Shown piece by piece: positions 17,072 through 47,950 of a stretch of 64,000 nt of DNA; the first letter of the stretch is position 1; the number at the start of each line of letters is the position of its first letter. Position numbers and translations under genes: made by a program. Source of the DNA: Ophelia neglecta (lineage: Eukaryota); assembly GCA_965285935.1 (NCBI GenBank), contig OZ260666.1, positions 64,914,001-64,978,000 of the forward strand, read 5' to 3'. Under the pieces are notes generated by a model. The model worked only from the letters and a program-made list of their open reading frames with translations. It was not told the DNA's origin and ran no database searches.

Positions 17072-18289
17072 GTGACGATGGCAAACATACCGCTGTTGTC
17101 GGGGTTATTATTTGCCCTGGTGATCTTCAAATCTTCTGCGACTGCGCAGAGTAACTTAGCTGCCATCTGTGGTGAGCTGTGCAGCCATCTTGACTACCAG
17201 GGAGACCACGAGAACTGTGTGTTCGCCTGCGAGAACTTACTGGTTATCGAACATTGGAAGTCTCTTCAAGGCGAGGAAAATGCTATAAACTCAGTGGACA
17301 AGAGAAAGCAATCCAACTTTGTACGTATTGGTCGCGACTATGATCGTCGTCTGCGTCAAAAAAGCTCCTTTGTTCGTATTGGACGCGACGCGGAGGACGC
17401 AATGCGATCTAAACGCGCCAGTTCCTTTGTGCGAATTGGACGCGCTGGCGTGGAGGAAGTGGACTTCCCTGACAAACGCAAAAGCTCCTTTGTCCGCATT
17501 GGAAAATCAGGCGATAAGAGAATGAGCAGTTTTGTTCGTATAGGAAAGTCGTACGAGCCAGAGGAAAAGAGGACAAGCCCCTTCGTGAGAATAGGAAAGG
17601 CAAGTAACTTTGTAAGGATTGGCAAAAAAGATGACGATAACGAAGAAAAGCGAGCCAGCTCATTTGTGCGCATTGGCAAAAGTGGCCCAGAAGAGGACAA
17701 ACGGGCCAGCAACTTCATCAGAATCGGGAAAAGAAAGAGCTCCTTCCTGAGAATAGGCAAAAAAGATGACAACAAACGAGCTAGCTCATTCGTTAGAATC
17801 GGCAAAAGTGACCCCGAGCTATTACTTCCGTTGGAGGAGGCAGAAAAACGAGCAAGTTCATTCGTACGTATCGGAAAATCAAGTCAGGAACCGGAACTGT
17901 TGATACCCGTGGAAGAAGAAAACAAACGCGCCAGCGCCTTTGTTAGGATCGGGAAATCTGACTCTGATTTGTTACCTGCAGAAGAGGACAAACGGGCGAG
18001 CTCCTTTGTGAGAATAGGAAAAAGTAATGATGAACTTTACATTCCAGTAGATGAGCAAAAACGACTTAGTTCTTTTGTCAGAATAGGAAAATCATCCCCA
18101 GAGGCACGCCATGAAACTGAAAAGAAAAGAGCATCTTCATTTGTCCGTATAGGAAAGAACGACCCAGAAACAGAAGACAAGCGGGCAAGTTCGTTTGTAC
18201 GGATCGGCAGATCCATGGATGGCCCCGAAGAAAAGAAGGCAAGCAACTTTGTGCGGATTGGGAAGAGGAGCGCTGAGACTCACCATTAA
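17072..18289 (+). CDS. FVRIa: FxRIamide (FVRIamide) neuropeptide precursor, main coding exon
   Basis: The 405-codon ORF has a hydrophobic signal peptide (IPLLSGLLFALVIFKSSATA) and a C-x3-C-x11-C-x3-C domain. It then has 18 copies of xSxF(V/I/L)RI-G flanked by KR/K/R cleavage sites and acidic spacers. These include 7x ASSFVRIa, 2x ASNFVRIa, and QSNFVRIa, MSSFVRIa, TSPFVRIa, ASNFIRIa, (K)SSFLRIa, ASAFVRIa and LSSFVRIa. A splice acceptor (ctctctttacAG, 17070-17071) directly precedes the ORF. Confidence 0.97.
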   Translation: MTMANIPLLSGLLFALVIFKSSATAQSNLAAICGELCSHLDYQGDHENCVFACENLLVIEHWKSLQGEENAINSVDKRKQSNFVRIGRDYDRRLRQKSSFVRIGRDAEDAMRSKRASSFVRIGRAGVEEVDFPDKRKSSFVRIGKSGDKRMSSFVRIGKSYEPEEKRTSPFVRIGKASNFVRIGKKDDDNEEKRASSFVRIGKSGPEEDKRASNFIRIGKRKSSFLRIGKKDDNKRASSFVRIGKSDPELLLPLEEAEKRASSFVRIGKSSQEPELLIPVEEENKRASAFVRIGKSDSDLLPAEEDKRASSFVRIGKSNDELYIPVDEQKRLSSFVRIGKSSPEARHETEKKRASSFVRIGKNDPETEDKRASSFVRIGRSMDGPEEKKASNFVRIGKRSAETHH

Positions 18290-30200: not shown

Positions 30201-31961
30201 CTGCCCGTAGTCTGTCATGGATCAGGTGACCCTCAAAATGGAGCGTCAATTATTTACACGCAGCCCACCCTTATTAAGTGGTGTTTCTCTATTAAAGCAT
30301 GAACGCTGTCACTGATTGCTAATTTCTTATGCTGTAAATCGATTCCATATGGATCGAGCGGAGAAATAATTGCCAATGACGATCGAATGTAAAAGTTATA
30401 TAGTACTGGCCTTTCAACAAAAATAATAAAGTAATATTTTACTTGGTTTTCATGCGCTGGCCTGTCTCATTTAATTGTCTAGCCCCAAGACAATGTCTTA
30501 TCTCATTTACTTGCTCTGAAGTGCTTCAAGGTCCGAGAAAACTTGGCTCTCAATCAAAACACCTGTTTCATCGGCTGTTCGGTGGAAAATCGTCGCCGAC
30601 ATTCTTGCCGTTCACAGAACTGGTTACTGGACAAATTTAGCTTTCCGAGTGATGACGAGTCGGAATGTAGCCTCTATGTGGATATGAGTATATATTTATT
30701 TTAGACAAAATTACATAAACGGGCATTCAACTTTCAGTTTGTTAATGTGTATTTTTAAAGGCCTCGAAACAACCCCATTTCACCTTTAATACGCATTCAC
30801 TCGCCGTTTGTCAGAATTGCTACGTCATTAACCTGAATTTCAAAATGTTCATAGGGCCAACGGATATGAAGTCCAACGAAATGAATTTGGTAAACCCTTA
30901 AATCTATGCTTAAAAACGCTTATTTATTTACCATATGCCCTATGACATTACGAAAAACCCGTGTAATTAACGCATCATTGTAAGAGCGTAATGGACAAAT
31001 TACTTTACAACTACTTAACTACTCTGTGCCTTCTCCCAGACAAAGTCCTGGCACATATTTCGACAAACGCGTAAATATCGTATTTTGTGTTTTGTTTTAA
31101 AGTTATAAAAGCATCGATGGAAAAGTTGGAATGTTGCTATAAGAACTTCGGAAATCGTAATTTGTGTAACTTTCATCTTATCATCCTAAGCTGATAAAAC
31201 CTTGAGAAACACTACAACTTACTACTATCTTGACCTAACCAGCTAAATAACGTTTATTGACTGGCCCAAATGTTTTAATTAAATTTTAGTAGATAGAGCA
31301 CTAATAAAAAAGATTGCACGTGTTACAAAATAAAGTTTATTTCGTGTTCAATGCAGGTACCGAGAATGTTTTAATGACATCTGTGACTCTTAAAGCCCCT
31401 TGGAATGCCTTGGTGTTATTTAAAGTCCGAAATACCTTTCAATATTTTAGTATGTAAAGCGAATAAGTGCTCCCGAAAAGAATGACAATACAATAGCTAA
31501 ATTTCTATTACAATTATTCAGCAATTGACAACTAATAGATAGTTAGATACTAACCAACCGTGTATGCTTTTCGATTTATATTTTTCCGAACTTGTACATC
31601 ACAGACCGTGGGTACATTTATCGTAAAGTAACACACCAGGAGACCTATCTCTGAATAATATACAACAGTATCACTATAATTAAATATATTTGTCCCATCT
31701 GACAGACCATACAATGTTTTTGTCAAGTAATAATTAGTATAAATATATACAATCGTTAAAATTATTCACTCATATTCACAAATGTGCTACCCAACTGAAA
31801 CTTTTAATGGATTTAACTACATATTTTATTTGTTTTTTACTTGCAGTGGAATTTTGATTAAGTTCAAATTAAAATAACAAGTGGACCGTTTTGATAGAAA
31901 ATTCTAGAACTGAAGACGAATCACATTCCCTGTCATTGCTCCCAGATGTGCTAATGTCAGC

Positions 31962-31973
31962 TTATTGGAATAA
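31962..31973 (-). CDS. CALC: Calcitonin-family precursor, probable terminal exon (LFQ-stop, followed by 3' UTR)
   Basis: A strong acceptor tttttgtctgtctttcAG at 31975-31974 gives phase 0 TTA TTC CAA TAA. Minus-strand AATAAA candidates lie downstream at 31830-31825 and 31341-31336. Confidence 0.65.
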   Translation of the reverse strand, partial: LFQ

Positions 31974-32346
31974 CTGAAAGACAGACAAAAATAGCATGGG
32001 TAGATAAGTAAATTTATCGTGTTAGAGCATATATAATATAACACCTTCAGATGCGAGCTTAAATACGGCGAATATAGCTCTGGGGTGTTATAGTATTTGA
32101 AAGTTAACTTTAATATTTTCTTCAGAATCCATGTCTGTTATATCATTTAATATTAGAGGCACAACACCTATTTGAATTTAGAAGTATGTGGCCATCGCTA
32201 TGAATCTGTAATAAACATCTGATCGTATCACTCTTCTGCAAGATACACTACTCCAGGGCGAGTAGTGTAAACTTTCTAATCATTATAACACTATAGCAGT
32301 TTTTGAACTACTACCTCAATCTCTTTGTGGCCACTACCTCACTTAC

Positions 32347-32497
32347 TTTCCCCGACACCAGTTTCTTGTAGAGTTTGGTGTCTCTCCTCTTCCTGCCGGG
32401 GGACAGGGGGGAGTTAAGATAGTGCCAGTGGTCAGCTACGTTAGCAGCGCTCTCCGTGGCGCAGTGTCCACCCAAATTGAACTGACAGGTACGTTTC
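32347..32497 (-). CDS. CALC: Calcitonin-family precursor, peptide exon C: TCQFNLGGHCATESAANVADHWHYLNSPLSP-amide (31 aa)
   Basis: Acceptor ttatttctcatAG, then KR-peptide-GRKRR-DTKLYKKLVSGK, with a phase-0 donor AAA|GTAAGT. The peptide has the typical lophotrochozoan calcitonin pattern (C-x7-C ... YLNS..SP-amide). Confidence 0.95.
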
Positions 32498-33203
32498 CTA
32501 TGAGAAATAACAAATAAGAAATAACTGTGAAGTGAACACGACCTTGAACCGTGTTGAATGTCACTACATGTGGTTCCTGTACTATATCATAGTAGTGGTG
32601 AGTCAATGCTTACAGTTAGGCAATTGTCCCCGACCTGCTAAAAATATAAGTAGTGTGGATGGCATTTCCTTTAGAGGTTACTCCGGTATTACTTTTGTAT
32701 TTGCGTCCCTTATAACGTTAAACCGCGTGTACACTTTATATATAATGATAGTTTTGGCACAATAGTGTCAAGAAATTGTTCATAATTATTGTAGGTAGCT
32801 GAGACAAAGAAATGTTTAACATGCACATTCAGCAACTTAAATAATTAAAGCCGGAGAAGTTCGTGACCCCCCCCCTAAGGAAGCTTATAAGATATCAGTA
32901 GTAGGCCTAGTGTGAAAACGCAGATCAAATAACCTTTTTTGTATGTCGAACCTATTTCATATTTAAAAAAAAAACATTTGCGGTCTATTAAGGTAAGGTA
33001 AACTAAGTATACTGCTTACCAGTACTGGGTACAATGTTAACACAATAATTTTAATTACATGCGACACCCATGACTTGATACATTTTAACCGTTTTCAATT
33101 CACATCAAGTAGTTATGATTTTGTGACGGGTTAACAGTTTTAGTAATGCCCTTGGTGAGGGTCTCCTACCTACATGTACTTACCCAAACCCACGAGTTTG
33201 GCG

Positions 33204-34704
33204 TGGGAGGGTAAAGTTGTCCCATGGGAAAGTTGTCACTAAGTACTCCTTGGGTTATTTAAAGATAATTCATGTGAATGACATTAGCAGTTTGTATGCG
33301 CACAGCACACTCATTTTATTTCTGAAGATTATGGGAACATTTCCTATTTAGAGGAGGAAGTAGGTTCAAATAATTTTTTTTCCACTCTTAATCGACAATT
33401 ATGTTTTGTAGTATTTTTCATATAATAGAATAGAATGCTTTCTGAAACTTACTAACACATAACCTTGTTTCAAAGATTAAAAACAATTCCCGACACCAAC
33501 TTTCATGAATAGGCTGGAGAACATAATTGTCTTCCAAATAGACGACGGGGGCAAGTTGTCACGCAATGTGACAGCTCATCCCAGTCTTTGACAACTTACC
33601 CCAGCATGGTAAAATCACTTAATTTGAAGGAGGTTCCTCTAATACAACCTCCAACTAGACTTTTGCGTGTGGTGCATAAACTACAAGCGTAAAAAAGCTT
33701 GCTTTGCTAATGTGAAATTCGCTATGAAATAAATCTCCAGAAAGTTGAATCTCCCTATGCTTTTACTGCACAAATCCTTTTAGTCGCGAAATTAAGCTCC
33801 TGCGAACTGTGAACATTTGAAAATGAGCAAATATTTCTTTCACTTCCAAAATAATATACCGTAAGGATGAACTTCTCAAAGCAATAAAATACTGCATCAA
33901 AGACTGCATTGAGTGCCTGCAAGTATCAGGGAAATGTGCAAAATGGAGACGGTGAAATAGTTATGGGTCATTTATCATACAAATTATCTCTGGCATATAC
34001 ATTTTTTATTTGAATGTCATATCATTTTCTAGCAAAAATAATGGCATTAACTAGAAACGTATTGTAATACATATTTTTCCTGCAATTTGGCTGTACCACC
34101 AACTTGCTTTGCTGCTAACTTGTGAATATACCAAGCTAATAAAATGTGTACAAGTTCAGATAGTGGATTTGTTTATCTACTACCTCATAAAGGCCTGAAA
34201 ACTCATGAGGCCTAATAGTATGGTTAACTGATGGACTGACAACTCCTCCGTCTTAACAGTACGTGCATAATACATGTTTCGGTCAATAGGCAGTTGGACT
34301 AGTCAAAGTGGAGTCTACTTAGCACTAGTCCAAAATATTTAACACTAATAAGAATATGTAACCTGGAATTAATTTTATTCAATGCTGTGCAAATATAATA
34401 TAAATCTAATTAATTCAGTCCTTTGAGAAAAATAAATGGAGAAAATGATACCTTAGCCTTTACATATTACCCAGATGAGTGTGACAATTTACTCCGGCTA
34501 CTGAGACAACTTACCATAGGACGGGGTAAGTTGTCACAGTACCTAATTTGGTCAATGTAGACACCAACATATGTCATTTGATGTTCGTAACAAGTTACAT
34601 TTTAGTGTAATCTTATGCTGTGTGACTTGTCCCTCTGCTGCTTTTGGTTGACCCATGACGCTTAAAAATGTACTTTCTTTGACAACTTACCCCGTCCTCC
34701 CCTA
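33204..34704. mobile_element. Probable non-autonomous DNA transposon (Tc1/mariner-pogo-like TIR element) in the calcitonin P2-C intron
   Basis: The right end TGACAACTTACCCCGTCCTCCCC+TA is an imperfect inverted copy of the left end GGGAGGGTAAAGTTGTCCCATGGGAAAGTTGTCAC. The motif GGGGTAAGTTGTCAC recurs internally in both orientations (~33545, 33590, 34480-34540). No transposase ORF is present. Confidence 0.55.
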
Positions 34705-34935
34705 GCAGCACTTTTAGTCCGCCGGTCTAGCAATTCTAGGGATCTTGACTTAAAGAGCTACAGTTCAATTCGTCCGCCGGCCCTAAGACACTGATATATT
34801 TTGTCCCCGTGGTCTTAGTACTCCGGCACTTTGATTCCTGGGGACTTAACAGCCGGGGACCAAATAATGTTGTTCAACTTCACTAAGCCGACCATGTTAC
34901 CCCTGCCGAATCAGTTTAGAATTATTTTTACGTAC

Positions 34936-35025
34936 TGTTCGTAGACTAGGTCATTCTCCATTTCGTCCAGGATTCTTTGGAGCATCTGCAGTCCTTGCCT
35001 CTTTCGGCTGAGGTCAGAGAGAGAG
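34936..35025 (-). CDS. CALC: Calcitonin-family precursor, propeptide exon P2 (90 bp, phase 2-2)
   Basis: Acceptor gactgctttcAG and donor CA|GTACGT. It encodes (R)SLSDLSRKRQGLQMLQRILDEMENDLVYE(Q), with the same length, phase and hydrophobic periodicity as P1. Confidence 0.9.
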
Positions 35026-35728
35026 CTGAAAGCAGTCAACATAAATGTCAGCTTCTATAGCGGGGCTGCTCAAAAGACTTTTTAAGGTTTTGCGCCATAT
35101 AAGAGCATGCTATGTATATACAATTATTGGTGAACGTGCAGCGTGTGTGGATTGGTACCATGGCTTTTCAGTACAATCCATGTCCGAACTGGCAACAATG
35201 GTGTATAGAAAATAGTGTGTACAACGAGGTCGGTGTGTGTGTTAAAATAAAAATCCAGTGATGATACCATGAAAAAAGGACAACAATTGAATGAATCAGG
35301 TCAGATGCATGTAGATGTTGGATTTAGGAAGTCATCACGTGAACAACAGGATGGTGACTGAACAAGGCCGAAGGTGGTAGGACCAGGGCGGAAAAGACAG
35401 ACACATAAATGGATACCACTCAGAAGATGACAGCGAGCGAGTTTAGACGTTTGTGATAAAAGGGGTGTCGATATGAATTCGGGTTGGTGTAAAAGCAAGA
35501 AAATGTCTCGATTGGGTTTTCGTTTGAGTGGAGTTGATTCCACACAAAACACATCTTTGAGAATCACTGTGAAAGGTTAGTAGAAAGCGGGTATTTTATC
35601 GCACATCACGGAAAAAGTAAAATCCGGGAACAATTGTGAGCACAATCGTCAGAGTAAGAAGGACGAGGAAACGCAACAAAATCACGTGATCGGGCACATC
35701 ATGGCGGCCAGGATGGCAGCCGACTTAC

Positions 35729-35881
35729 CGCTGGATGGTCACTGATTCTAGAGCTCGCTTTCCCGGCGAGAAGTGATCAGATCCCACCCACGACTGGGCT
35801 TTGGCCTGCTCAGTGAGGCCCTTAAGGAAGCAGGCGTACCCGGCACTGCCACCGCTTAGGGCGCAAGGATCGAAGCGCTTC
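35729..35881 (-). CDS. CALC: Calcitonin-family precursor, peptide exon B: FDPCALSGGSAGYACFLKGLTEQAKAQSWVGSDHFSP-amide (37 aa)
   Basis: Acceptor tttttgcccttgaAG, then KR-peptide-GKR-ALESVTIQ. The peptide has a C-x10-C ring and an SP-G-KR end. The phase-2 donor is CG|GTAAGT. Confidence 0.88.
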
Positions 35882-36605
35882 CTTCAAGGGCAAAAATTAC
35901 ATGCAGGCAAGAACATGGAATTAAGTTTCATGCAACCTGTGTGTGCATATATGTGCAAAATTTTTAAAAATGCAGAAAAATCCTCTGGTATCGTTAAAAT
36001 ATGTTATGTCTGAATTTACACAAAAATTTACTTCTTTCAAAAAGTAATGAAAAAATATGTGAAATCTTGCAGTGATATTATGTTATAGTAGATTTCATTA
36101 AGATAAGCCAAAGAGTCGGACAGAAGAGGAAGCAAGGAGTGAATTGGAGAAAAGACAAATTAGTGCAAGACAAGCCCATGCTAGTGCTGATCATAGAGAA
36201 CGAGAAATAGGAATATTAAGTTGACAAGAGAGAAAAAATTATGATATAGTTGGAAGCTAATTAATTTTTTCTTCGGTAAGACTATTATCGCTGATTGGAT
36301 GTACAATTGGTGTGGGTTCTCCAATTATCCTGAAAGATGGGATAAGCAAGGTAGAAAAAGCAATAATCTTCTTTATAGTTCGTATTATTTCATTGATTCA
36401 GTGATTTATGTCGATCTTCATGGGATTTTGCAGAATGAGCCATGAATGAACTGACGCGACCTAACAGTTTCATTATGGCGTCATTGCTGCAGTACACAGT
36501 TGAGGGAGACTGGACATGAATACAATTATGATCTGAAAAATAACATAGGCATGCTCAAACGTGCCGCAGAAAATGACCAGCCATTTTCTGTCTTACAGTC
36601 TCTAC

Positions 36606-36788
36606 CTCTCCAGGTCCTTGGTCGTGTCGCCAGATGGCGCTTCTGGGGTTATCGAGGGCGCCCCCTGGAAGGAGCGTTTTCCTGGGCTCCCTCCACTTCT
36701 GAGGAAGCCGAGCATGTTTATTTTATCATTCAACAAAGACGCTGAGCAGTGTTTACTCATTCCGCCGCCTATAACACATGTCCGTTTT
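36606..36788 (-). CDS. CALC: Calcitonin-family precursor, peptide exon A: TCVIGGGMSKHCSASLLNDKINMLGFLRSGGSP-amide (33 aa)
   Basis: Acceptor cttattcctAG, then KR-peptide-GKR-SFQGAPSITPEAPSGDTTKDLE. The peptide has an N-terminal Cys pair (C-x9-C) and a C-terminal SP-G-KR amidation signal. The phase-2 donor is AG|GTAGAG; if it is not used, the stop is at 36604-36602. Confidence 0.9.
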
Positions 36789-37647
36789 CTAGGAATAAGT
36801 GATGTCAGGTGAGAGACAGAGTCCAAGAAAGAGGCAAAGACTTACAAGATTAAATAAGAAAAGAGAGATGGCAATAAAAATAGAAACAGCTTAAGCTTTT
36901 AGGAATTATTTTAAGTTATACGGCGTGGTACAAATAATCGCGGATACCTGAAGAAAAATGTAGATGGTTAATTCTTTACAAAAATGTAAGAAAATCCAAT
37001 TAGCTAAGAGTCCAGGCTCCATACTATGTCCACTTTTTTATTTGAGCAGTCCGATTAATTTCATTTAAAACAAATAAAAGGAAGTCGAAATATGTCTATA
37101 ATGTTTCACTTAAGCACCAAGTAAACCTGATTAAGTCAAATTTGCTTTAACGCATGAAAATATTGGAAACATTACAAACTGGCAAAACAAAACGAACCAT
37201 CGTTACACCTTAAAACGTTTTCTGTCATTTTTTCTCGAAAAGCTTTTGGCCTTATACGAAAAGCTATCAGGTGGTCGAGGAATTGGCTGCAGATTTACCC
37301 CAAAGTTAAGTGAGCAAACCTCTTGTCTGATTTCCCGTGAGAGCTTCTAGATCCTACAGGCATTTTTGTCTACAATACATGACCTTTTAATTACAGCTGA
37401 GGAAGTTGCAATGGTCGTTTGGAGCCTACGCACGCCACTCTGTGCAAACTCCAGATGTAAACTTATGGCTGAACTCCATGTGCATTCTCTGGGGGACACT
37501 TTATGATAGATGTTTTTATGACATGTTCCAACTTTAAGATGCTTTTATAGTACGGAATTAAGGATCACTTCGAAGCAGAAGTTTGGCCATAGAATATCAT
37601 ATTACCAGAGAATTACGCAGGATTTTGATACTAAAACTAACACTTAC

Positions 37648-37737
37648 TGTTGTCCGCTTAAGTCCTCATCTATGTCTGTCACCACCCTTTTTAACGCCGT
37701 GATTCCGTGTCTTGTCTCCTTAAGTTGGCCTAATAAT
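37648..37737 (-). CDS. CALC: Calcitonin-family precursor, propeptide exon P1 (90 bp, phase 2-2)
   Basis: Acceptor ttttttctttatcAG and donor CA|GTAAGT. It encodes (K)LLGQLKETRHGITALKRVVTDIDEDLSGQ(Q), a helical acidic pro-region leading into the QKR cleavage site. Confidence 0.9.
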
Positions 37738-40700
37738 CTGATAAAGAAAAAATAAGTTCAAATAAGAGAACACGGAAAATTTAGTTAGTATACACTCCTA
37801 GTGAAAGAAAAAGAATTAAATATAATAGGCCTATATAACAACAAATCATACTGCTCAATTTGCTCAAATGTTTTCGGGTATACGCATGCGCAAGCTGCGG
37901 TCAATATTGATATTTTAGTTTTCATTGTTATTGTTATAGTTTTTAAGAGCTATTGGTAAAGTAATTTTACAAACGAAGGAGAAACCAAAAAATGGTGACT
38001 CTTTTGTATATGCGTTTCAAAGGTCTACCAGACATGAATAATTTCCGTTGGTATATCCTGAAAGCGGTAGTCCGTGACACTATTAATTGTTGGACATTTC
38101 TGATAAATTGACCTATGATATTACGCTATTATTCACATGTCCGAATGAATAGAACTTGGTTTGAAATTACGTGAAATTAACCAAAAGACTTCGACAAGAA
38201 AAGAGTGCGGTAATAAGGAACATAATGGGTAAAGCCACACTAATAGAGTGACTACTAAACATGTATCAACTGATTCCATTTAATTGTAAATTTCATACAT
38301 TCATAGACGGCGAGAAGCCATGATCATAGGATCAATTTCAATGTCCATTAAAAACGCGAGTGATCCCCACAATAATTATTAATCGATTTCCGCTGTTTAT
38401 TAATAGTATGAACACAGATAATGGCTCGATATAATAATTGTGTGCTTTCCTAACACGAGGGCATTTAATAGCTAGGAAACCTGTTTGTATGTCATGCACC
38501 ACTATTTTTAATGATTGTGATTGCTTATTGACAAAATATAGTAAAATATTTATCTTTATGTTTTCAGGACCTCGTAAGCGGACTGTCACGTACAAGTTGG
38601 CCTTACATGGTGAGTTAAAATTATTGTTCCTAAGTCGCATATACAACTAGGAAGCAAATAAGGTTAAATGTGGGAGGCAAAACTGATATTTTTGCTAAGG
38701 GGCCTAGTTTTATGGCATCGGACTTATGGGTCAAACAGAAGCCTTATAAATAAAGGAGATAAGAAGATTGCCTTACAGGATAAAGATTACCAAGGCATCA
38801 CGGCATTGTGCTAAGAACTATCTATGTGACTGGACCCAATTAGATCTATTCTCATACGTAGCTACCAAGCTGGACCGCTCTCAACATTGCATGCAGTTAG
38901 AAGGAAATTATGGTTTGTGTGTGTCATTGGGTTCTTTGACCTTTTTAAGGCATTTGCTAAGGCCATTGTCTTTCACTGATCGGTCACCATAAATCTCCAA
39001 CCCTAGGCTGGACGGCTGGCAGTTCGGGGTATTTTAAGTCGCCTGTATGTTTTATAACGTACCAAGCGTACTATGTTATCTAGGTCCATAACACGAGCTG
39101 TGTCAGGAACAAACTCCCTGGACACTTTTGATAAAATTCTGACATCGCCTTATACGACAGACAGACAGAGGTTGTTTTGTTTTTACCAATATGCAGTTCT
39201 TCTCTTGATAAGCCAGGGTTGATAAGACGGAATTTGATTTGGTTTCTAAGACCGCCTTTTCTGAGCCGTCTGGAAATCGCGATAGCATGATGCACTCTTA
39301 TAAATAAGGAAAAGAGTTCTTATTTTGTTTGAGACGAAAGAACAGCCGAGCAGGTGATCAGATACCCTTGCCAAGTTGTTCCCTTTTTCGCAAATACTCT
39401 GCCAAGCTGTACCTTTTTTCTCTACATGTTTTTGTGTGCCTTCTATAAATACGTTAATGTTTATCTTAATTTTGTTTGTTTTTAGTTAATTAACGGGTGA
39501 TTGGATAAATGCGTCCTACACTCAAACACGGTTGTAACCAAAAGGTTCATGGTTATAATCAACATGACAATGGCTTGTAAAAAGGTGATTTCTTCTATCC
39601 CTTCATTAGTTTTATGTAAAATTGTGGCTAGTTCTTAGTTTTGCGACTATCAACGATGACACTGCTGTCACCAATGGAGCGTTTCCTAGGACAGTGATCT
39701 GTAAACATTGAGTGGATTCATTTACTTGTCATTATTACTGGGCAATTGTTAAGCTATATTTTATCCATACATAAATGTCTTAGTATTAACAATGTATATG
39801 GCCATGTATATGTTATAGGCTAGGGTATAGGATATGTGTGGCTATCTCTCCCAACTCAGAACATCAAGTTACGTATCTACCTCGTAACCCTGATGACGAA
39901 GAAATGAAAAAAGTCACCTTTATATAAGACTCGCTGACTGGTGTGCGACCCTTTTCTAAGATTAACTCTAATTTAGGCTAAAGGTAAAACACTGCGGGAT
40001 TAGACGCAGCATTCTCTCGGGATTTGAAATTGGCAATGCCTCCAGCAATGGCTTTTAATATAAGGTGGATAGTTGATTGTAGTCTCTTGTTGAAGGTATT
40101 TGTGGGCGTTCAGACATTCCAGTAGTGCCTGGCTACCAGTCGGCCATTAAATATACACGGCTCCTCATATGAAAAACAACACAATCTCTATATGTATTAA
40201 CTAAAGCCACTTTCATTTGGTGCTTATGTTTTTTTTTTCATAGAATGTCAGCTAAATCTGTAGAAAGACTCGTTTATCTGTATGTTATTAGAGCCTTCGA
40301 CACCAATATTCTCTTTGAGGTTCCTTGTGTAACTTACACTTCCTTCATCTCAGCATAACCATCGTTCTTTTTCCAATTGCACAACTATTCCTTGGCGCTG
40401 TCCTATATGTATAGCCAAAATGTCACAAATTGATGTCGCATATTTTTTGTGCCAACATGTGATGTTGAGACAGTATTTTAGAGCTGCATTAGCTTTGAAC
40501 TATGTCAGTAAATAGATGACCCATTTCCCTAACGGGGGTGAGAACAAGCCAATTTGTATGTTTTCGAGGGCAGCGCTATTTTTCATAATGATGATGATGT
40601 GTACATCTTCTCCCTCGTTCGAAAGCTGGGCTTTCCGATCGAAAAGGCGCTATTTTCCGGGCGCTGTCTAGTGGTTACACGCAAACGTGGACAAATAAAC

Positions 40701-42181
40701 CATTGATACGTCAAAATATATCCATAATATGCAAATAAAGGTTTTTTGCCAACTTTGAAATGATGTCTGTTAAAGTAGTTATCCCCGGTTGCCCTAAACA
40801 GCTATCAATATATTAATGCCGCGATAAACGGTAATTTAAGGTAACCCTTAAACTTGAATAAATTATATTATATATACTCAAGAAATTCAATCATTTGCTA
40901 TGAAACTGTATATATCACTCCTTTGGTCATAGCAGTGCATCCTCTATAGACTGCCAATGCGTTTTAACAATAAAGTCTTGGGATCTTTTCTTGTTGCCTT
41001 ATACTTTCTTTACCACACGCGCACAACCAGTTCATGTAACTCGATAGTCAATGTCAGGAAAATGTAGGGTTCTATCTTATTTCCGGAGCCAAAACAAATA
41101 GGTACCGATTAAACCCTTGGTGTCATGTATATTTAGCAGGCGGAAACCTTGATAAGACGCGAATAATGCTAACAATGGCGTACATTTTATACAATTATGT
41201 CTATTACCAGGGAGTAAATTCCACCGACAATAATATAACGACTAATACATTGTTAGGATATCGCTAACATTTTCGTAAGAAAAAATGTGATCAGATGTTT
41301 CAATTTCTTCGTTGGTACTAATTGCAATGTTACATGCAATCAATGTTTGTTCGCGTCGCATCCTTTCAGGGATTTCATTAAGGTTAATTCACATATCATA
41401 CTAATTTAGTAAGATTTCATTTTCTTTGCTTTCGATGTGACATTTTTATAGAGTTTATTTGCAGTGAGATATAGTCTCTGCACTCCTTGCACAATATTAA
41501 TTTGGAGTCTAATAATATATAGACAGCTTTGGAGGTTTATCTCTCGTAGATTTTGACATGTATGAGTCCAAGGCCGTCATCATGTTATACCTTGATTAGT
41601 CTTAATGTTTCCTAGCACCTTCAGATGATCGGACGGTAGGAATGCCGTTAATGAAAGGGAATAATTATGTAGAAAATTATAGGTTATTGCAACCGGAATG
41701 GGGAAAATCTTTAATGTTACAGCTATAAGAAAACACATTAGTTTGTAAGCATGCTATAAAGAAACTCCTTACTTCATTTAGACCTATTATCGGTTATCTA
41801 TTGTCACGGTGATTAGTTCCTTTGTGATAATCCTGAGTTGAGAACAAAACTAGGGTTTGCTCATTTTATTTGCGTTCCGATCAAAACAAACTTCGTTTCG
41901 AGCTGTCTGTCAAAGAGCCAAATGGTAATTAAAGATTTGATTTGAAGTGTGAAGCGTATTGTATGAGGTTTTGATCATGTCATCAGCCTGAGATTTTAGT
42001 TCTGTCATGCATCGTGAATCAGAAGTTACGTGATACCCAAATTCCGATAAAAGGTTAATAGAAATTTGGCGCATGAAAAAATGTATTAAACATTCTTTTC
42101 TCGGTGTCTAATCAATTAGTCACAAGCACGACTAAGCTATTTACATAAATACCTTGACAATCAGCCAGGAATGACACATGT

Positions 42182-42509
42182 TATAATACATTCCGATTCC
42201 TGCTATAATCTATTCTAATTCCTACTATAATCTATTCTGATTCCTGCTATAATCTATTCTGATTCCTGCTATAATCTGTATTCTGATTCCTGCCATAATC
42301 TATTCTGATTCTTGCTATACACTTTCCTGATTCCTGCTATAATCTATTCTAATTCCTTCTAATTTCTATTCTGATGCATGCTATAATCTATTCTGATTCA
42401 CCCTATCATCTATTCTGATTCCGCTTATAATCTATTCTGAATCCTCCTATAATCTTTTCTGATTCCTCCTTTAATCTATTCTGATTCCTTCTATAATATG
42501 TTCTAATTC
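42182..42509. repeat. 22-bp minisatellite (ATTCCTGCTATAATCTATTCTG), ~15 diverged copies
   Basis: Directly visible tandem array in the intron between the signal-peptide exon and P1. Confidence 0.92.
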
Positions 42510-43341
42510 AAACACACCGTACGCAAAGAATCTTTAGCCAGCTTGGAAAATCATCCGATTATGACTAAAGTAATTTCGCTGGCTGTTTAATGATGCGCAG
42601 TTAGTAATTGTAGATGCCCCAGATTGACACTTTTTACCCTTTTCCTCTGTAAACTTGTGTTGTTCGATTTTACCCTATTCCAATATTTACTTGTGCCGTT
42701 CATTTCCACCATCGCCTAAGGCGAGAACGGATTGTAAAAACTACATTCTTTTTAGTTCTCGTGCCGGAAGGTTTTACGAGGGAGAACATTTCCGGATTTA
42801 CAACAAGCACCAAAAGCGTTCCTACTTGTTCATATTTCATTGATCTTATATTGATCTACTTTGAGAATGGACGTCACTTTTCAGCCCCCGTGTGTTGTTT
42901 TTAAATTACACCGAGGCAACCCGGAGATAAAGGAAATGTCAGTTTTATCATAAAGCAATGCAATGAGCCTTTTGTACCAAAGGAGTTTATCAAATCTATG
43001 ACTACTCGGACACTTATTGTCTGCAATGTTGTAACCCTTTCCATAAAGAATAAATCAGGCTTTGTGGAATGACAGCAAAAGAATACAAACGAAATCATTT
43101 TAACATTTACATTTGCAATATTCCCAGCAACTTTGATCTCATATATTTTCCAGAATGGCACTTCCAGATATAATGCGTTGAAGAGGGTGTTTTTTCAGTG
43201 CTTATTTTGTCGAAAAACAACCAAAGCTATCCACGGGAATTTTAATTACATCTGATCTTAGTGTTAAAGTTGATTTTTTTTTCTACATGATTAATATCCA
43301 ACCCTATGGTTGTTCTTTTTGCGATTCCTCTTAACACTTAC

Positions 43342-43445
43342 TTGAGAGCATTGTCTATGTTTTCCTGCTGAGTAGCTTGCGTGAGTTGTATGGTTAGGTA
43401 CACCATACATACAACTAGCGACGCACTCTTCATCTGTGCATTCAT
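43342..43445 (-). CDS. CALC: Calcitonin-family precursor, signal-peptide exon (exon 43458-43342)
   Basis: Acceptor gttttctgtttcAG, then 13 nt of UTR and an ATG at 43445. It encodes MNAQMKSASLVVCMVYLTIQLTQA-TQQENIDNAL and ends in phase 2 (AA|GTAAGT). Confidence 0.85.
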
Positions 43446-46299
43446 GTCTCTTCCGGTTCTGAAACAGAAAACATTAAGTTCATTAATAATTGATAAGAAT
43501 TGAGAGATACTTAAAAGGCATTTATGATCACTATTTATTGTTAAATCTTGACGATGCTTGTTAAAATCCTCAGTAGTGTATTGATATACAATCAGGATGT
43601 CGCATGTCGTCTGCTGTAGTTTGTAGTGACAGCATGGGTGGGTCTAGGCGTCTTATTGGCAGACGAACTCAACTTTATGCCGACAACCTTTCAAAGTGCG
43701 AAATAAAATGAGCCAGTTACTCCGCTAAAGATGGCCTTTGCACTTTTGACAAATTGCCCTCAGTGATAGGAATAGTAACAATTGGCAAGCCGAAAGAGCA
43801 ACCCTGAAAACAACAAGATAAATCATGCGTATGGGTCGGTAACTTCTGGACAGAACTTGCATCTTCTTTATTACCCTTATCAAGCATACAATATGTATAC
43901 GCTATAATAAGGAACACTCTTTGAATATTGACGATATTATGCTCTGACAGGTGCAGAAAAGAGATAAATAAACTATCACTTGTAAGAAAAAAGCCAGTCA
44001 CCGCGGCACCTTTACGGTGTTGGCTGTATCCGCATTTATTTGAGAAACATAATTCTTAATGCGTTAGACGAGTTACAACTTGCTGTCGTTCTGCGTGTTT
44101 GTACTGTCGCTATGGCCGTTAGTAAATCATAAAGTGATATTCTCTTAATTAATCATGCTACTGGACATTTCTCTAAGCTGTGTCTTAGATCCACAAGAAC
44201 ATAGAGTCAAACAGGATATTGTCAAACAGGATATAAAGGGGGCGTGCTTTTCAAATATCAAGGGAACTAACTAAGGCTATTCTGTATTAATCTTGTTTCC
44301 GCTTATTTACGGTCGATTGTTATATATGAGCTGTCCAGCAAGTCCCTAGCTACTTTAAAATGATAACAGATCACTTTAATTGCTACTTTGTGCCTCCCAA
44401 AATGTCTGTTGTGTGAAAGTGTATATCAATCCGCAAGGCATACCGGTAGTCGAGTGCGCGGTCACAGAATCCTAATTGAGAAGCCAGTGGTCTCACAATC
44501 CCCAAATGTAAGAACCGAAGCATTAGAGTAATACGTCACGTGTATCATGCCAATATACGTCTTCACCACTGGGGAGTGATTTTAGCCTGCGAGAGGTGTA
44601 AAAAGACTATTTGTGTGATGTACTTGGTATCGTCTAGTTGATAGTCAAACCAGTCGAATTTCTTCTCGAAAGAATGAGAAAATTGTTTAAAAACCTGAAT
44701 ATTTATGCTGCTATTTTATTATCATCCATAGGAAATCGTAACCATATCATTCCCGTATTATCATAATTTGTCTAGGATGTGCCCTGCAGTAATCGACCTT
44801 TGTTTCAAAGAATTGAATCGGGCACTGATCTATTGAGTTAATGTGCCTTTGTCTTAGAAGTTACCTTCGCTGACCACAAAGCGCCTACTGTGGCCTGACA
44901 GTTTCTTGGCCAGGATGGCCTCCAGCCATGTTTGGTGATTATTACTCTAGCGTACACCGTATTTAATTGTAACGTCCCCATAGCTCATATTTCTCTATAG
45001 ACCATCAAATTGTGTTTGCGAAAACGATTTTCGGTGACTCTGGTATTGTTATTTTGTAGTATGGCAAATCAGAAACAAATGTTCTTTTCACGGTCAGGTT
45101 CTCACATGAAGCTTAAGCCAGTTTATTTCTCGTAACTCGCCCAAAAAAAACCCATCGAATGACTATAAGGGGATTAAGGCGTCACTCTGGTCCATGGTAA
45201 ATTGTCGTACGTGAGCTTCTTTATAATGTAATAAACTGGCGGACTCATGAGACCAACAATAGAATGCAAAGTTATAGTATCAGCAAGATTTTGAAGGTCG
45301 GCTATACCTGTAGGCGTTTTCGAGATTAGATTATTGGCGGAGTAATTATTGAGTAAAGCGGCTAATGCCCTGCCGGAATTCACTTCGTTTTTTCAACTCT
45401 CAGGCCGTCTCCTTCGCGTAGGAATTGGAGTGCGGACTTCTTTTGGTGTCAAGCATTGACGACATTAGCTAGAGCCACTATACAACATTTAGAAAGTTAA
45501 GACTCTTTGGCAATGGCAGTTAAACAGTGAGTGCCCCTTGTATATACCATGGTTTTATGGCATTAAAAGCTAATGTACCGTAAATTAGCTTCTCATTGGA
45601 AGCATGAGTCGTACCCTTCAACTTAAACGTCTGAAAAATGCTCACATGTGAGAGTTTTAATGCCATGGGTTCTGTCATTTTTGTGACATGTTTTGAATCA
45701 GTATCGAAAGCTACTGATATATTTATTCTCTGTAACTGTCCTGATCATATGTATAACCTTCGAGTATGGTTATTTTTAATAATATGCTTAAATAAATAGC
45801 AGAAATCAGATTTCCATCATCCGCGCCCCCCCCCCCTCCCCCTCCCCCCACCACCGTACAAAGCCAGGCTCATAAATAAGGAATGATGGTTTTAGGGTTA
45901 ATGCTCTACCATAATGCAGGTGGAATTTTAGTAATGAGAAGCTAAAATTTCCCTTTTATGAAAAGGAGCGATTGAGGTCTGGCGATATTCACTAAGCTTG
46001 AATTATTTATTAGAGTGCAGCTTTCCTGACAGATCACAAAGTGAAGGTAAAAAACGGAATATAATTCTAACAATTTATTGCCTGAATAGACTGTTTAATA
46101 GACTCCGAAGTTTGAGAAAAGGCTAATGATATAGCACCAGATAATTTGCCCAATTTTCTTTGATATTGCATCCATGAGCAGAGGTTCTCTTGTTCTTAGT
46201 CCAATTTCACTTCAAACGTTTTATTAGAATCGCGTGGTGGTAAAAGGTCCCAATTGTGACAATAATAATTTGTTTGATAAATCACGTTTGTTCTGATGC

Positions 46300-47950
46300 A
46301 GAAATAAAAGACTATAGTCATTTATTTATAAGATATGGAGTTGTTTATTGGTAAAAATCACACTTCAGCCGACCGTCATAAAAGTGGACCTCAATGGAAT
46401 ACACAGTTTAGCAAACTCCTTAATATGGATTACACAAAGGAGAGCGAGCTATTTGTTTATTGGGGAATAAAAGCCTTCCATACTTAAGAGAAAATATCGA
46501 AGACAATAACCCATTGAACAGATTTCTAAATTGAAAGGAAATATCTCAGGAAATAAGGAAAAATTATATATCTATATATAGCATTAGAAAATATGTTCAG
46601 ACTGAGCCGTAAAAAAAGTTTATATTTTATACTCTTAAAACAATAATAGAGAACCTTCACAAAAAATTAAAAACCTAAAAAGCCGTTATTTGTACTTTAG
46701 TTTATCGAACCCTTCCATTTGATCAACTATTGAGGAAAAGTATTACTGGAAATGTGGTGATTAAATCAATTTGTTATCTAGGAATATAGTATCCCCCGGG
46801 ATAGAATTATCTGCCTTGGGCAGTTGATTACTGTTAATATATGAATGGCTTAAATGTTGTCGTAATAAGTTGGATAACTATTGTGAAAATGGGGTTTAAC
46901 AAGGAAACAGATAAGTTTAAGGCTAAGATTATAAGTAAGAATGAGAAAGATAATGAGTACCTGGGACTGAGTGTTTTTATCAAATGTTCAATTATGATTC
47001 ATGTGAAATTGTAAAACACATTCAATTTTTTGGATTTATTATTTCATTGACGAAAAGGAATTCTGAAGCATGTTCCGTCCAAATATTAAAGTATTCTGTA
47101 ATGCAGGAGTGATACATTAGTCACACGGCCCGGTATATGTACATGTATATATTTGAACATTCCTGATGACCAGAGCACTTGTATAGCACGATAACAGCAA
47201 TGAAGTGCTGGCTGTTATCAGCCCACGGCCATTGTTGTAGAGGAGGCAGGCTTTGTTAGAGAGGTTTAGATTTGCGTGACATACCGCCTCTGATCCTATG
47301 GGCACCACAAACCAGGTATTAATAACCACTTTGATTACCACCTTTAATCATGATGCTTATTTATTTGGAATACAATACCACTTTGACGGGGCCCAATGTT
47401 TCTCTGAAATGTCAGAAATATTAATACACTCTAATGGCTATATGATGAAAAGCTCAAACCAGCTTCTCTGACCGCTGCGTGACGCTCTTCTACTCTGACC
47501 GCCGCGTGTCGGTCATCTCCTCTGGCCGCCGCGTGGCGGTCATCTCCTGTGGCCGCCGCGTGACGGTCATCTCCTCTGGCCGACACGTGACGGTCATCTC
47601 CTCTGGCCGCCGCGTGACGGTAATCTCCTCTAGCCGCGTGACGGTCATCTCCTCTGGCCGACACGTGACGGTCATCTCCTCTGGCCGACGCGTGACGGTC
47701 ATCTCCCCTGGCCGACGCGTGACGGTCATCTCCTCCGCCGCGTGAATTATTTTTTCTTTTGAGCATTTCCAAATAGCATTCAAGTTATACGTGGTACAAG
47801 TCTGAGGTCGAATAAAGAATTGTTCATTTGTTTCGTTAGTAAGTCCGTAAATTATCATGATCCTCTTGACATTTTCCAGAAGCCCATAAAGAAAGTGTAT
47901 CTTTGTATTTAAAGGTAAACAGCGAGCTGTCGAGCGCCAAAGCAGGTTTA
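46300..47950 (+). mobile_element. Possible decayed CR1/L2-like LINE remnant interrupted by the 27-bp minisatellite
   Basis: Degenerate endonuclease-like fragments ('ELFVYWG' ~46445, 'DQLL' ~46720, 'GIELSALGS' ~46800) and a WFKSYL-like 'WYKS...R' (~47790) appear in the expected order, with many stops. Confidence 0.3.
47471..47745. repeat. 27-bp GC/CpG-rich minisatellite (CGCGTGACGGTCATCTCCTCTGGCCG[A/C]), ~10 copies
   Basis: Directly visible tandem array, with one 24-bp variant unit. It explains the three overlapping repetitive ORFs in the track. Confidence 0.93.

What the first reader, a model, noticed from the sequence alone, without database searches (positions are those of the whole stretch)
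31962..43445. Hidden seven-exon calcitonin-family gene encoding three different calcitonin-like peptides in one precursor
Seen in sequence: seven short minus-strand exons, each with an AG acceptor and (except the last) a GT donor, join in frame (104+90+183+153+90+151+12 = 783 nt, 260 aa + stop). The product is signal peptide - pro1 - QKR - TCVIGGGMSKHCSASLLNDKINMLGFLRSGGSP-GKR - spacer - RKR - FDPCALSGGSAGYACFLKGLTEQAKAQSWVGSDHFSP-GKR - pro2 - QKR - TCQFNLGGHCATESAANVADHWHYLNSPLSP-GRKRR - tail. Only one exon shows in the ORF track. Established knowledge: an N-terminal disulfide ring plus a C-terminal Pro-amide defines calcitonin-type ligands of family B1 GPCRs, and multi-peptide calcitonin precursors occur in some invertebrates. 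Inference: this is a three-ligand hormone system whose two upstream peptides are strongly diverged and may be undescribed.
Basis: partly seen in the sequence, partly recalled or inferred. Interest (0 to 1): 0.92.

Follow-up and report, generated by a model that had tools for sequence, protein, structure and literature searches.

The report
Annelid three-peptide calcitonin precursor gene
This is a real, intact seven-exon gene for a calcitonin-type neuropeptide precursor carrying three calcitonin-like peptides, but the same three-peptide precursor was already described in the annelid Capitella teleta, so it is a new member of a known kind.

Summary
Seven minus-strand exons (43445-43342, 37737-37648, 36788-36606, 35881-35729, 35025-34936, 32497-32347, 31973-31962) have canonical AG/GT borders and compatible phases, giving 783 nt. 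They encode a signal peptide, two homologous 90-nt "pro" exons and three Cys-ring, Pro-Gly-basic peptides.

Orthologue proteins searched against every six-frame segment of the window hit exactly exons 2-6, in order, and nothing else. Capitella and Paralvinella share the intron positions. The third peptide is 97% identical to Capitella's, and most codon differences are synonymous.

All three peptides have orthologues in Capitella gene 222382, which Cardoso et al. 2020 described as coding for three CALC-like peptides. Paralvinella has the same layout. The Urechis GenBank records "calcitonin-1" and "calcitonin-2" are isoforms without, or with, the middle peptide.

Exons 2-5 are all multiples of three in the same phase. 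The two upstream peptide exons are therefore probably cassette exons, and the three-in-one precursor may be only one isoform.

No RNA data exist for this genome, so splicing here rests on comparison only.

Verdict: a real gene and a new member of a known kind, of low-to-moderate interest.

The parts
43342..43445 (-). Exon 1 (104 nt). It holds the ATG at 43445, a signal peptide (basic n-region, hydrophobic core, small residues at -3/-1 before about residue 25) and the start of the pro-region. The donor is GTAAGT.
   Evidence: Kyte-Doolittle window up to 2.6; weak similarity to Urechis and unnamed annelid N-termini
43459..43471 (-). Acceptor-like polypyrimidine-AG, 13 nt upstream of the ATG. It hints at an unmapped non-coding 5' exon further upstream.
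   Evidence: sequence only; inference
37648..37737 (-). Exon 2 (90 nt): pro-region 1, a predicted helix module ending just before the Q-KR site. It is homologous to exon 5.
   Evidence: E 4e-5 to 6e-5 against Capitella and Paralvinella; 54-68% identity
36606..36788 (-). Exon 3 (183 nt): KR, the CT1-type peptide (36683-36781; 33 aa, 9 residues between the Cys, ends Ser-Pro), Gly-Lys-Arg, then a spacer. It is probably a cassette exon.
35729..35881 (-). Exon 4 (153 nt): KR, the middle (M-type) peptide (35764-35874; 37 aa, 3 residues before the first Cys, 10 residues between the Cys, ends Ser-Pro), Gly-Lys-Arg, then a short spacer. Its acceptor is a weak AAG. It is probably a cassette exon.
34936..35025 (-). 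Exon 5 (90 nt): pro-region 2, with a conserved internal RKR site followed by a module of about 21 aa ending before Q-KR.
   Evidence: (65-77% identity to annelid orthologues)
32347..32497 (-). Exon 6 (151 nt): KR, the CT2-type peptide (32398-32490; 31 aa, 7 residues between the Cys, ends Ser-Pro), Gly-RKRR, then a conserved C-terminal tail.
   Evidence: 83 homologues; 86-90% identity; 97% to Capitella; 25 synonymous against 5 replacement codons
31962..31973 (-). Exon 7 coding part (LFQ plus TAA). Annelid transcripts end similarly, in LLQ or LFPQDH.
31825..31830 (-). AATAAA polyadenylation signal about 130 nt after the stop codon

Best explanation
This is the orthologue, in what is most likely a sedentary annelid, of the lophotrochozoan calcitonin-type (CALC-like) prohormone gene.

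The gene is modular. After a signal-peptide exon, each 90-nt "pro" exon is followed by one or two peptide exons. Every peptide exon starts with one nucleotide that completes a codon, followed by Lys-Arg.

Inferred processing:
1. The signal peptide is removed.
2. Prohormone convertases cut at the KR, RKR, GKR and GRKRR sites.
3. A carboxypeptidase trims the basic residues.
4. Peptidylglycine amidating enzyme turns the C-terminal Gly into a Pro-amide.
5. The two Cys form an N-terminal ring.

The products would be up to three peptides (33, 37 and 31 aa). They are expected to signal through calcitonin/DH31-type family B GPCRs.

Exons 2-5 are all multiples of three in one phase, and other annelids express transcripts lacking the homologues of exon 3 and/or exon 4. 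The two upstream peptide exons are therefore most likely alternatively included cassettes. The gene would then yield CT2-only, CT1+CT2, M+CT2 and possibly three-peptide precursors.

Shown here: exon borders, frame, homology, conserved intron positions and purifying selection. Inferred: expression, splicing pattern, processing and receptor.
For: - **Exon borders and frame:**
- **Specificity:** orthologue proteins hit only E2-E6 of the window, collinearly.
- **Homologues:** the E6 translation finds 83 homologues. These include Urechis "calcitonin-1" and "calcitonin-2", and proteins of Paralvinella, Owenia, a chiton, bivalves, Lingula and a nemertean.
- **Same layout elsewhere:** Capitella CAPTEDRAFT_222382 and Paralvinella KAK2144101 carry the same three peptides in the same order.
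- **Gene structure:** intron positions and phases, the 90-nt pro exons and the 151-nt CT2 exon are conserved in both genomes.
- **Selection:** E6 against Capitella has 25 synonymous-only and 5 replacement codons. All 40 listed within-sample variants are intronic.
- **Alternative splicing in relatives:** Urechis P0003 against P0002 and Owenia P0005 against P0096 each differ by one in-frame block. Unnamed transcripts exist as CT2-only, CT1+CT2 or M+CT2.
- **Skipping is in frame here:** an E2-to-E5 junction would give His, the residue seen at that junction in CT2-only transcripts of other annelids.
- **Literature:** a three-peptide Capitella precursor (PMC7200681). Alternative splicing of CT genes in echinoderms and insects (PMC12638048; PMC4237046).
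Against: - No RNA run exists for this organism. The three runs that hold the locus are genomic contigs, so no junction is observed directly.
- The three-peptide forms in Capitella and Paralvinella are genome-based gene models.
- I found no transcript with both upstream peptides, and no isoform evidence in this species.
- Pfam's calcitonin model does not score any exon.
- The signal peptide was judged by hydropathy only.
- The receptor was not identified. I saw only that HRM-domain exons exist in the genome.
Confidence: 0.85

Rival explanations
1. All seven exons are spliced constitutively, so a single 260-aa precursor always delivers the three peptides together in equal amounts.
For: All seven exons are in frame with good splice sites. 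Genome gene models in Capitella and Paralvinella include all three peptide exons. Cardoso et al. treat the Capitella precursor as one three-peptide product.
Against: Transcript-derived sequences from Urechis and from unnamed annelid assemblies lack one or both upstream peptide exons. Exons 3 and 4 are symmetric, so skipping keeps the frame, and exon 4 has a weak AAG acceptor. No transcript with both upstream peptides turned up.
Confidence: 0.3
2. The middle peptide (exon 4) is not a calcitonin-receptor ligand. Its larger 10-residue ring and N-terminal extension would make it inactive, a spacer-like product, or a ligand for another receptor.
For: The ring has 10 residues between the Cys, against 7 and 9 in the other two, and 3 residues precede the first Cys. 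It is the least conserved of the three, at 42-50%. In Cardoso's supplement the Capitella b peptide has the lowest similarity values.
Against: The ring Cys pair, a GY motif before the second Cys, a conserved Trp and the Ser/Ala-Pro-Gly-Lys-Arg end are kept in Capitella, Urechis, Paralvinella and this genome. A similar upstream peptide occurs in the nemertean Tubulanus. That argues for selection on a processed, amidated peptide.
Confidence: 0.2
3. The locus is a silent or decaying gene copy, and the apparent exons are relics.
For: No expression data exist.
Against: All exons are open and all splice sites canonical. I found no second copy in the 762-Mb genome. Replacement changes against Capitella and Paralvinella are strongly under-represented. 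The listed polymorphisms avoid the exons.
Confidence: 0.02

Closest known systems
Capitella teleta CALC-like precursor (gene 222382, CAPTEDRAFT_222382; peptides a, b, c of Cardoso et al. 2020, PMC7200681)
   Same: Both have three Cys-ring, Pro-amide peptides in the same order, a pro-region before the first and third peptides, and the same intron positions and phases. The third peptide is 97% identical, the first 59% and the middle 42%.
   Different: The spacers differ, and so do the lengths of the two upstream peptide exons (183 and 153 nt here; about 141 and 192 nt in Capitella). The Capitella model has a doubtful N-terminus without a signal peptide, whereas this gene has a clear one.
Urechis unicinctus calcitonin-1 (QUP52007) and calcitonin-2 (QUP52008)
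   Same: The E2, E4, E5, E6 and E7 homologues are collinear, with 86% identity over E6 and 52% over E4. The two records differ by one in-frame block equal to the middle-peptide exon.
   Different: Neither Urechis record has a CT1-type (exon 3) peptide. Whether Urechis lacks that exon or only skips it could not be checked.
Two-peptide lophotrochozoan calcitonin precursors (Owenia, bivalves such as Mya and Sinanodonta, the chiton Liolophura; oyster and mussel CALC/CT precursors in the literature)
   Same: These have an upstream CT1-type peptide and a downstream CT2-type peptide, each preceded by a pro-region ending in KR. In oyster and mussel such peptides activate family B calcitonin-type receptors (PMC8557429; PMC7200681).
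   Different: They lack the third, middle peptide with a 10-residue ring. Owenia has a different optional 45-aa block with a Cys pair at that position.
Alternatively spliced calcitonin genes: vertebrate CT/CGRP, sea cucumber AjCTP1/2, termite calcitonin A/B
   Same: One gene gives different calcitonin-family peptides by alternative exon use (PMC12638048; PMC4237046).
   Different: Here alternative use is inferred from exon symmetry and from relatives, not observed. The mechanism would be skipping of internal cassettes rather than alternative 3' exons as in vertebrates.

Membership tests
Lophotrochozoan calcitonin-type (CALC-like) neuropeptide precursor | Significant sequence homology to named or described calcitonin precursors | tested here: met
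   The E6 translation gives 83 hits at E<=1e-3 and 37 at E<=1e-10. These include Urechis calcitonin-1 and -2 and the Capitella 222382 protein. E2-E6 are each collinear with the orthologues.
Lophotrochozoan calcitonin-type (CALC-like) neuropeptide precursor | Peptide with two Cys near the N-terminus, able to form a disulfide ring | tested here: met
   Cys are at 2/12, 4/15 and 2/10 of the three predicted peptides, aligned with the orthologues' Cys. Disulfide formation itself was not testable.
Lophotrochozoan calcitonin-type (CALC-like) neuropeptide precursor | C-terminal Pro followed by Gly and basic residues (the Pro-amide signal) | tested here: met
   All three end Ser-Pro-Gly followed by KR or RKRR. 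Amidation itself was not testable.
Lophotrochozoan calcitonin-type (CALC-like) neuropeptide precursor | Secretory precursor: N-terminal signal peptide and dibasic cleavage sites flanking each peptide | tested here: met
   E1 has a hydrophobic core and a small -3/-1 site (heuristic, no SignalP). Each peptide has KR or RKR before it and GKR or GRKRR after it.
Lophotrochozoan calcitonin-type (CALC-like) neuropeptide precursor | Gene structure shared with orthologues | tested here: met
   Capitella (L004) and Paralvinella (L005) have 90-nt pro exons, peptide exons that start one nucleotide before the KR codons, and a 151-nt CT2 exon.
Lophotrochozoan calcitonin-type (CALC-like) neuropeptide precursor | Transcribed and spliced as modelled | not testable with these tools
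   No RNA run holds the locus. The three runs are genomic contigs without exon joints.
Lophotrochozoan calcitonin-type (CALC-like) neuropeptide precursor | Peptides activate a calcitonin/DH31-type family B GPCR | not testable with these tools
   I saw only that at least 16 HRM-domain exon matches exist in the genome. The receptors were not typed.
Pfam PF00214 Calc_CGRP_IAPP (vertebrate-centred model) | Score above the Pfam gathering threshold | tested here: not met
   No exon translation matches, even at E<=10. I therefore do not file it under this Pfam model. The named invertebrate homologues also carry no precomputed Pfam domain.

The most novel reading that the evidence does not exclude
The middle peptide may represent a distinct, old third branch of calcitonin-type ligands. 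Its marks are a 10-residue ring, a 3-4-residue N-terminal extension and a GY motif before the second Cys. It is shared by several annelids, and a similar upstream peptide occurs in a palaeonemertean.

In annelids it would be delivered through a cassette exon. Tissue-specific splicing would then choose which mix of calcitonin-family ligands is secreted, possibly with different receptor preference. That would be an independent parallel to vertebrate CT/CGRP.
Probability: 0.3. Interest if true: 0.5.

Novelty: new member of a known kind. Interest (0 to 1): 0.25.

Why it matters
The result gives a clean, complete gene model, with a true signal peptide, for a prohormone that is probably unannotated in this genome. 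It also shows that the three-peptide calcitonin precursor described once in Capitella is conserved across several annelid families.

The symmetric exon design, together with isoforms in relatives, makes a testable prediction. Annelids may choose among calcitonin-family ligands by exon skipping, much as vertebrates, echinoderms and insects do by other splicing routes.

This bears on an open question raised in PMC8557429: which of the two lophotrochozoan calcitonin/DH31 receptor groups pairs with which ligand. It does not reveal a new kind of system.

Tried and rejected
- **Pfam on all six exon translations:** nothing relevant. The only line was a chance 13-bit Cas9 bridge-helix match.
- **Own-genome search with E3 and E6:** only self matches plus one noise hit with stops, so no paralogue was found.
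- **Regex and phmmer scans of the whole window for further calcitonin-like exons:** none. A weak Lingula-derived hit at 62807-62980 is noise.
- **RNA evidence:** The look-up of sequencing runs lists no RNA holder. Read laying shows genomic contigs only. Its two listed joints, with 21-23-nt sides, do not match exon borders.
- **Search for expressed proteins with both upstream peptides:** Capitella residues 96-200 found only Capitella itself.
- **Literature:** a search for a Urechis calcitonin paper found none in the held library.
- **The search of earlier findings:** nothing near the locus and nothing on calcitonin.
- Exons were searched one by one by reference, and junctions were checked as single codons.
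- **Not run:** structure and complex prediction, because they would not change the verdict.
Full report
**Observation**

I required an AG before, a GT after, an open frame in the inherited phase and the terminal CA needed to make the Gln of Q-KR. Under those conditions each intron holds exactly one 90-nt solution: 37737-37648 and 35025-34936.

The seven coding exons are:

| Exon | Coordinates | Length (nt) |
|---|---|---|
| E1 | 43445-43342 | 104 |
| E2 | 37737-37648 | 90 |
| E3 | 36788-36606 | 183 |
| E4 | 35881-35729 | 153 |
| E5 | 35025-34936 | 90 |
| E6 | 32497-32347 | 151 |
| E7 | 31973-31962 | 12, including TAA |

- Acceptors are polypyrimidine-AG. E4 has the weakest, an AAG.
- Donors are GTAAGT (E1, E2, E4, E6), GTAGAG (E3) and GTACGT (E5).
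- The junction codons are Lys (E1/E2), Gln (E2/E3), Arg (E3/E4), Arg (E4/E5) and Gln (E5/E6). E6/E7 joins in phase 0 and reads LFQ then stop.
- An AATAAA lies at 31830.
- A polypyrimidine-AG sits 13 nt upstream of the ATG, which suggests an unmapped non-coding 5' exon.
- E1 has a basic n-region, a hydrophobic core (Kyte-Doolittle up to 2.6 in 9-residue windows) and small residues at -3/-1.

Each exon was handled by reference.

**More than chance**

I ran phmmer with seven orthologue proteins against all 2,965 stop-to-stop segments of the window in six frames. It returned E2, E3, E4, E5 and E6 in the right order, and nothing else below E about 1. With Capitella as query the E-values were 6e-5, 3e-13, 2e-11, 6e-8 and 2e-29. 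The window holds no further calcitonin-like exons, and I found no second copy in the 762-Mb genome.

**What it is**

A full phmmer scan of 1.84 billion representative proteins with the E6 translation gave 83 hits at E<=1e-3, 37 of them at E<=1e-10. The named hits are:
- Urechis unicinctus "calcitonin-1" and "calcitonin-2"
- a Paralvinella palmiformis hypothetical protein
- Owenia fusiformis proteins
- a chiton, bivalves and a gastropod
- Lingula
- the nemertean Tubulanus

A word-based search with the Urechis protein added Capitella teleta CAPTEDRAFT_222382 and several unnamed transcript-sized contigs. The best matches are all annelids, so the window most likely comes from an annelid. That is an inference, because no name is available.

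Capitella and Paralvinella carry the same three peptides in the same order. Per-exon BLASTP shows collinear matches. For Capitella, E2 maps to residues 73-94, E3 to 99-143, E4 to 150-192, E5 to 213-238 and E6 to 240-289.

An alignment of the predicted peptides sorts them into three orthology classes:
- **Downstream CT2-type.** It is 97% identical to Capitella, 88-91% to Paralvinella and Urechis, and 59-69% to mollusc and brachiopod peptides.
- **Upstream CT1-type.** It is 56-59% identical to Capitella, Paralvinella and Owenia, and 39-44% to bivalve and brachiopod peptides.
- **Middle M-type.** It is 42-50% identical to Urechis, Paralvinella and Capitella. Its next-nearest relatives are CT1-type peptides.

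The M-type has 10 residues between the Cys, against 9 in CT1 and 7 in CT2. It also has three residues before the first Cys and a GY motif before the second.

**Gene structure and selection**

I mapped the Capitella and Paralvinella proteins onto their own loci (L004, L005). Both show the same architecture:
- 90-nt pro exons
- peptide exons that begin one nucleotide before the Lys-Arg codons
- a 151-nt CT2 exon
- a short last exon in Capitella

Over E6, 30 of 50 codons differ from Capitella at the DNA level, and 25 of those changes are synonymous. Against Paralvinella the counts are 23 synonymous and 7 replacement.

The only runs holding the locus are genomic contigs from one sample. All 40 variants listed over 32200-38000 fall in introns, although exons make up 11.5% of that stretch. 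This is weak support, because the variants are clustered and six were not shown.

**How it most likely works**

Established knowledge of prohormone processing gives the following inferred steps:
1. Signal peptidase removes the signal peptide.
2. Convertases cut at the KR, RKR, GKR and GRKRR sites.
3. A carboxypeptidase removes the basic residues.
4. The amidating enzyme converts Gly into a C-terminal Pro-amide.
5. The Cys pair forms a ring.

In oyster and mussel, calcitonin-type peptides activate family B receptors of the two lophotrochozoan calcitonin/DH31 groups (PMC8557429; PMC7200681). This genome has at least 16 HRM-domain exon matches, but I did not type the receptors.

**Alternative splicing**

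E2, E3, E4 and E5 are all multiples of three and share one phase, so any of them can be skipped in frame. Whichever upstream exon is joined to a peptide exon, a residue followed by KR results.

Sequences from relatives show such skipping:
- Urechis calcitonin-1 equals calcitonin-2 minus one block, which is the M-exon homologue.
- The two Owenia proteins differ by a 45-aa block at the same position.
- Unnamed transcript contigs occur as CT2-only, CT1+CT2 or M+CT2.
- CT2-only forms have His at the pro1/pro2 junction, which is what an E2-to-E5 join would give here.

So far the three-in-one form exists only as genome gene models, in Capitella and Paralvinella. I found no transcript with both upstream peptides. 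I therefore rate alternative inclusion of E3 and E4 as more likely than constitutive splicing. It remains an inference for this species, because no RNA run exists.

**Comparison with what is known**

Cardoso et al. [quoted passage not shown] Their supplement lists the peptides as G222382a, b and c, which is the gene I recovered independently. Conzelmann et al. 2013 had already placed annelid calcitonin beside DH31 (PMC3890597).

By its own criterion, then, the finding is a correct gene model but not a new system. It is a new member of a known kind.

**What stays open**

- whether the three-peptide isoform is expressed
- whether the M-type peptide has its own pharmacology
- how old the M-type peptide is; a similar upstream peptide in the nemertean Tubulanus hints that it predates annelids

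**Scores**

- Interest: 0.25.
- Most novel reading not excluded: a distinct third ligand class delivered by a cassette exon, with probability about 0.3 and interest 0.5 if true.

Noticed in passing
window 17072-18289 (+); likely ATG at 17078: A single-exon ORF of about 403 aa has a signal peptide and 18 copies of an F-x-R-I-Gly-Lys/Arg unit (mostly SSFVRI-amide type) between acidic spacers. It is an FVRIamide/FxRIamide neuropeptide precursor, a known lophotrochozoan family. It lies about 13.5 kb from the 3' end of the calcitonin gene, in convergent orientation. Whether this neighbourhood is conserved in other annelids was not checked beyond 3-kb flanks (no such repeats in L004 or L005).
   Followed up: partly
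window 34938-35024 and 37650-37736 (-): The two 90-nt pro exons are homologous to each other. Exon 5 is better conserved among annelids (65-77%) than the CT1 and M peptides. It starts after a conserved RKR/KKR site and ends at Q-KR, which predicts a non-amidated helical peptide of about 21 aa. The same basic-helix-KR module precedes the CT2-type peptide in bivalve, chiton and Lingula precursors (read). Its function is unknown.
   Followed up: partly
P0096 versus P0005 (Owenia fusiformis): The two Owenia isoforms differ by a 45-aa in-frame block between the CT1-type peptide and pro-region 2. The block contains a Cys pair but no Pro-Gly-basic end. It sits at the same position as the annelid M-type exon and may be a diverged or independent cassette.
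   Followed up: no
P0070 (Tubulanus polymorphus XP_074660343): The upstream peptide of this nemertean calcitonin precursor has the M-type hallmarks: a 4-residue N-terminal extension, 10 residues between the Cys, and a GY motif before the second Cys. That is unlike the CT1-type ring, so the M-type may be older than annelids.
   Followed up: partly
L005 3001-9246 (Paralvinella) and L004 3001-4153 (Capitella): The public gene models for both orthologues have implausible N-terminal extensions. Paralvinella has about 135 extra residues before the real signal peptide, and Capitella has no signal peptide. The Paralvinella model also runs on past the conserved C-terminus. They look mispredicted.
   Followed up: no
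window 47431-47858 (-) and 47449-47742 (+): A short tandem repeat gives long repetitive ORFs in several frames (units like GDDRHAAAR). It is probably a minisatellite rather than a gene.
   Followed up: no
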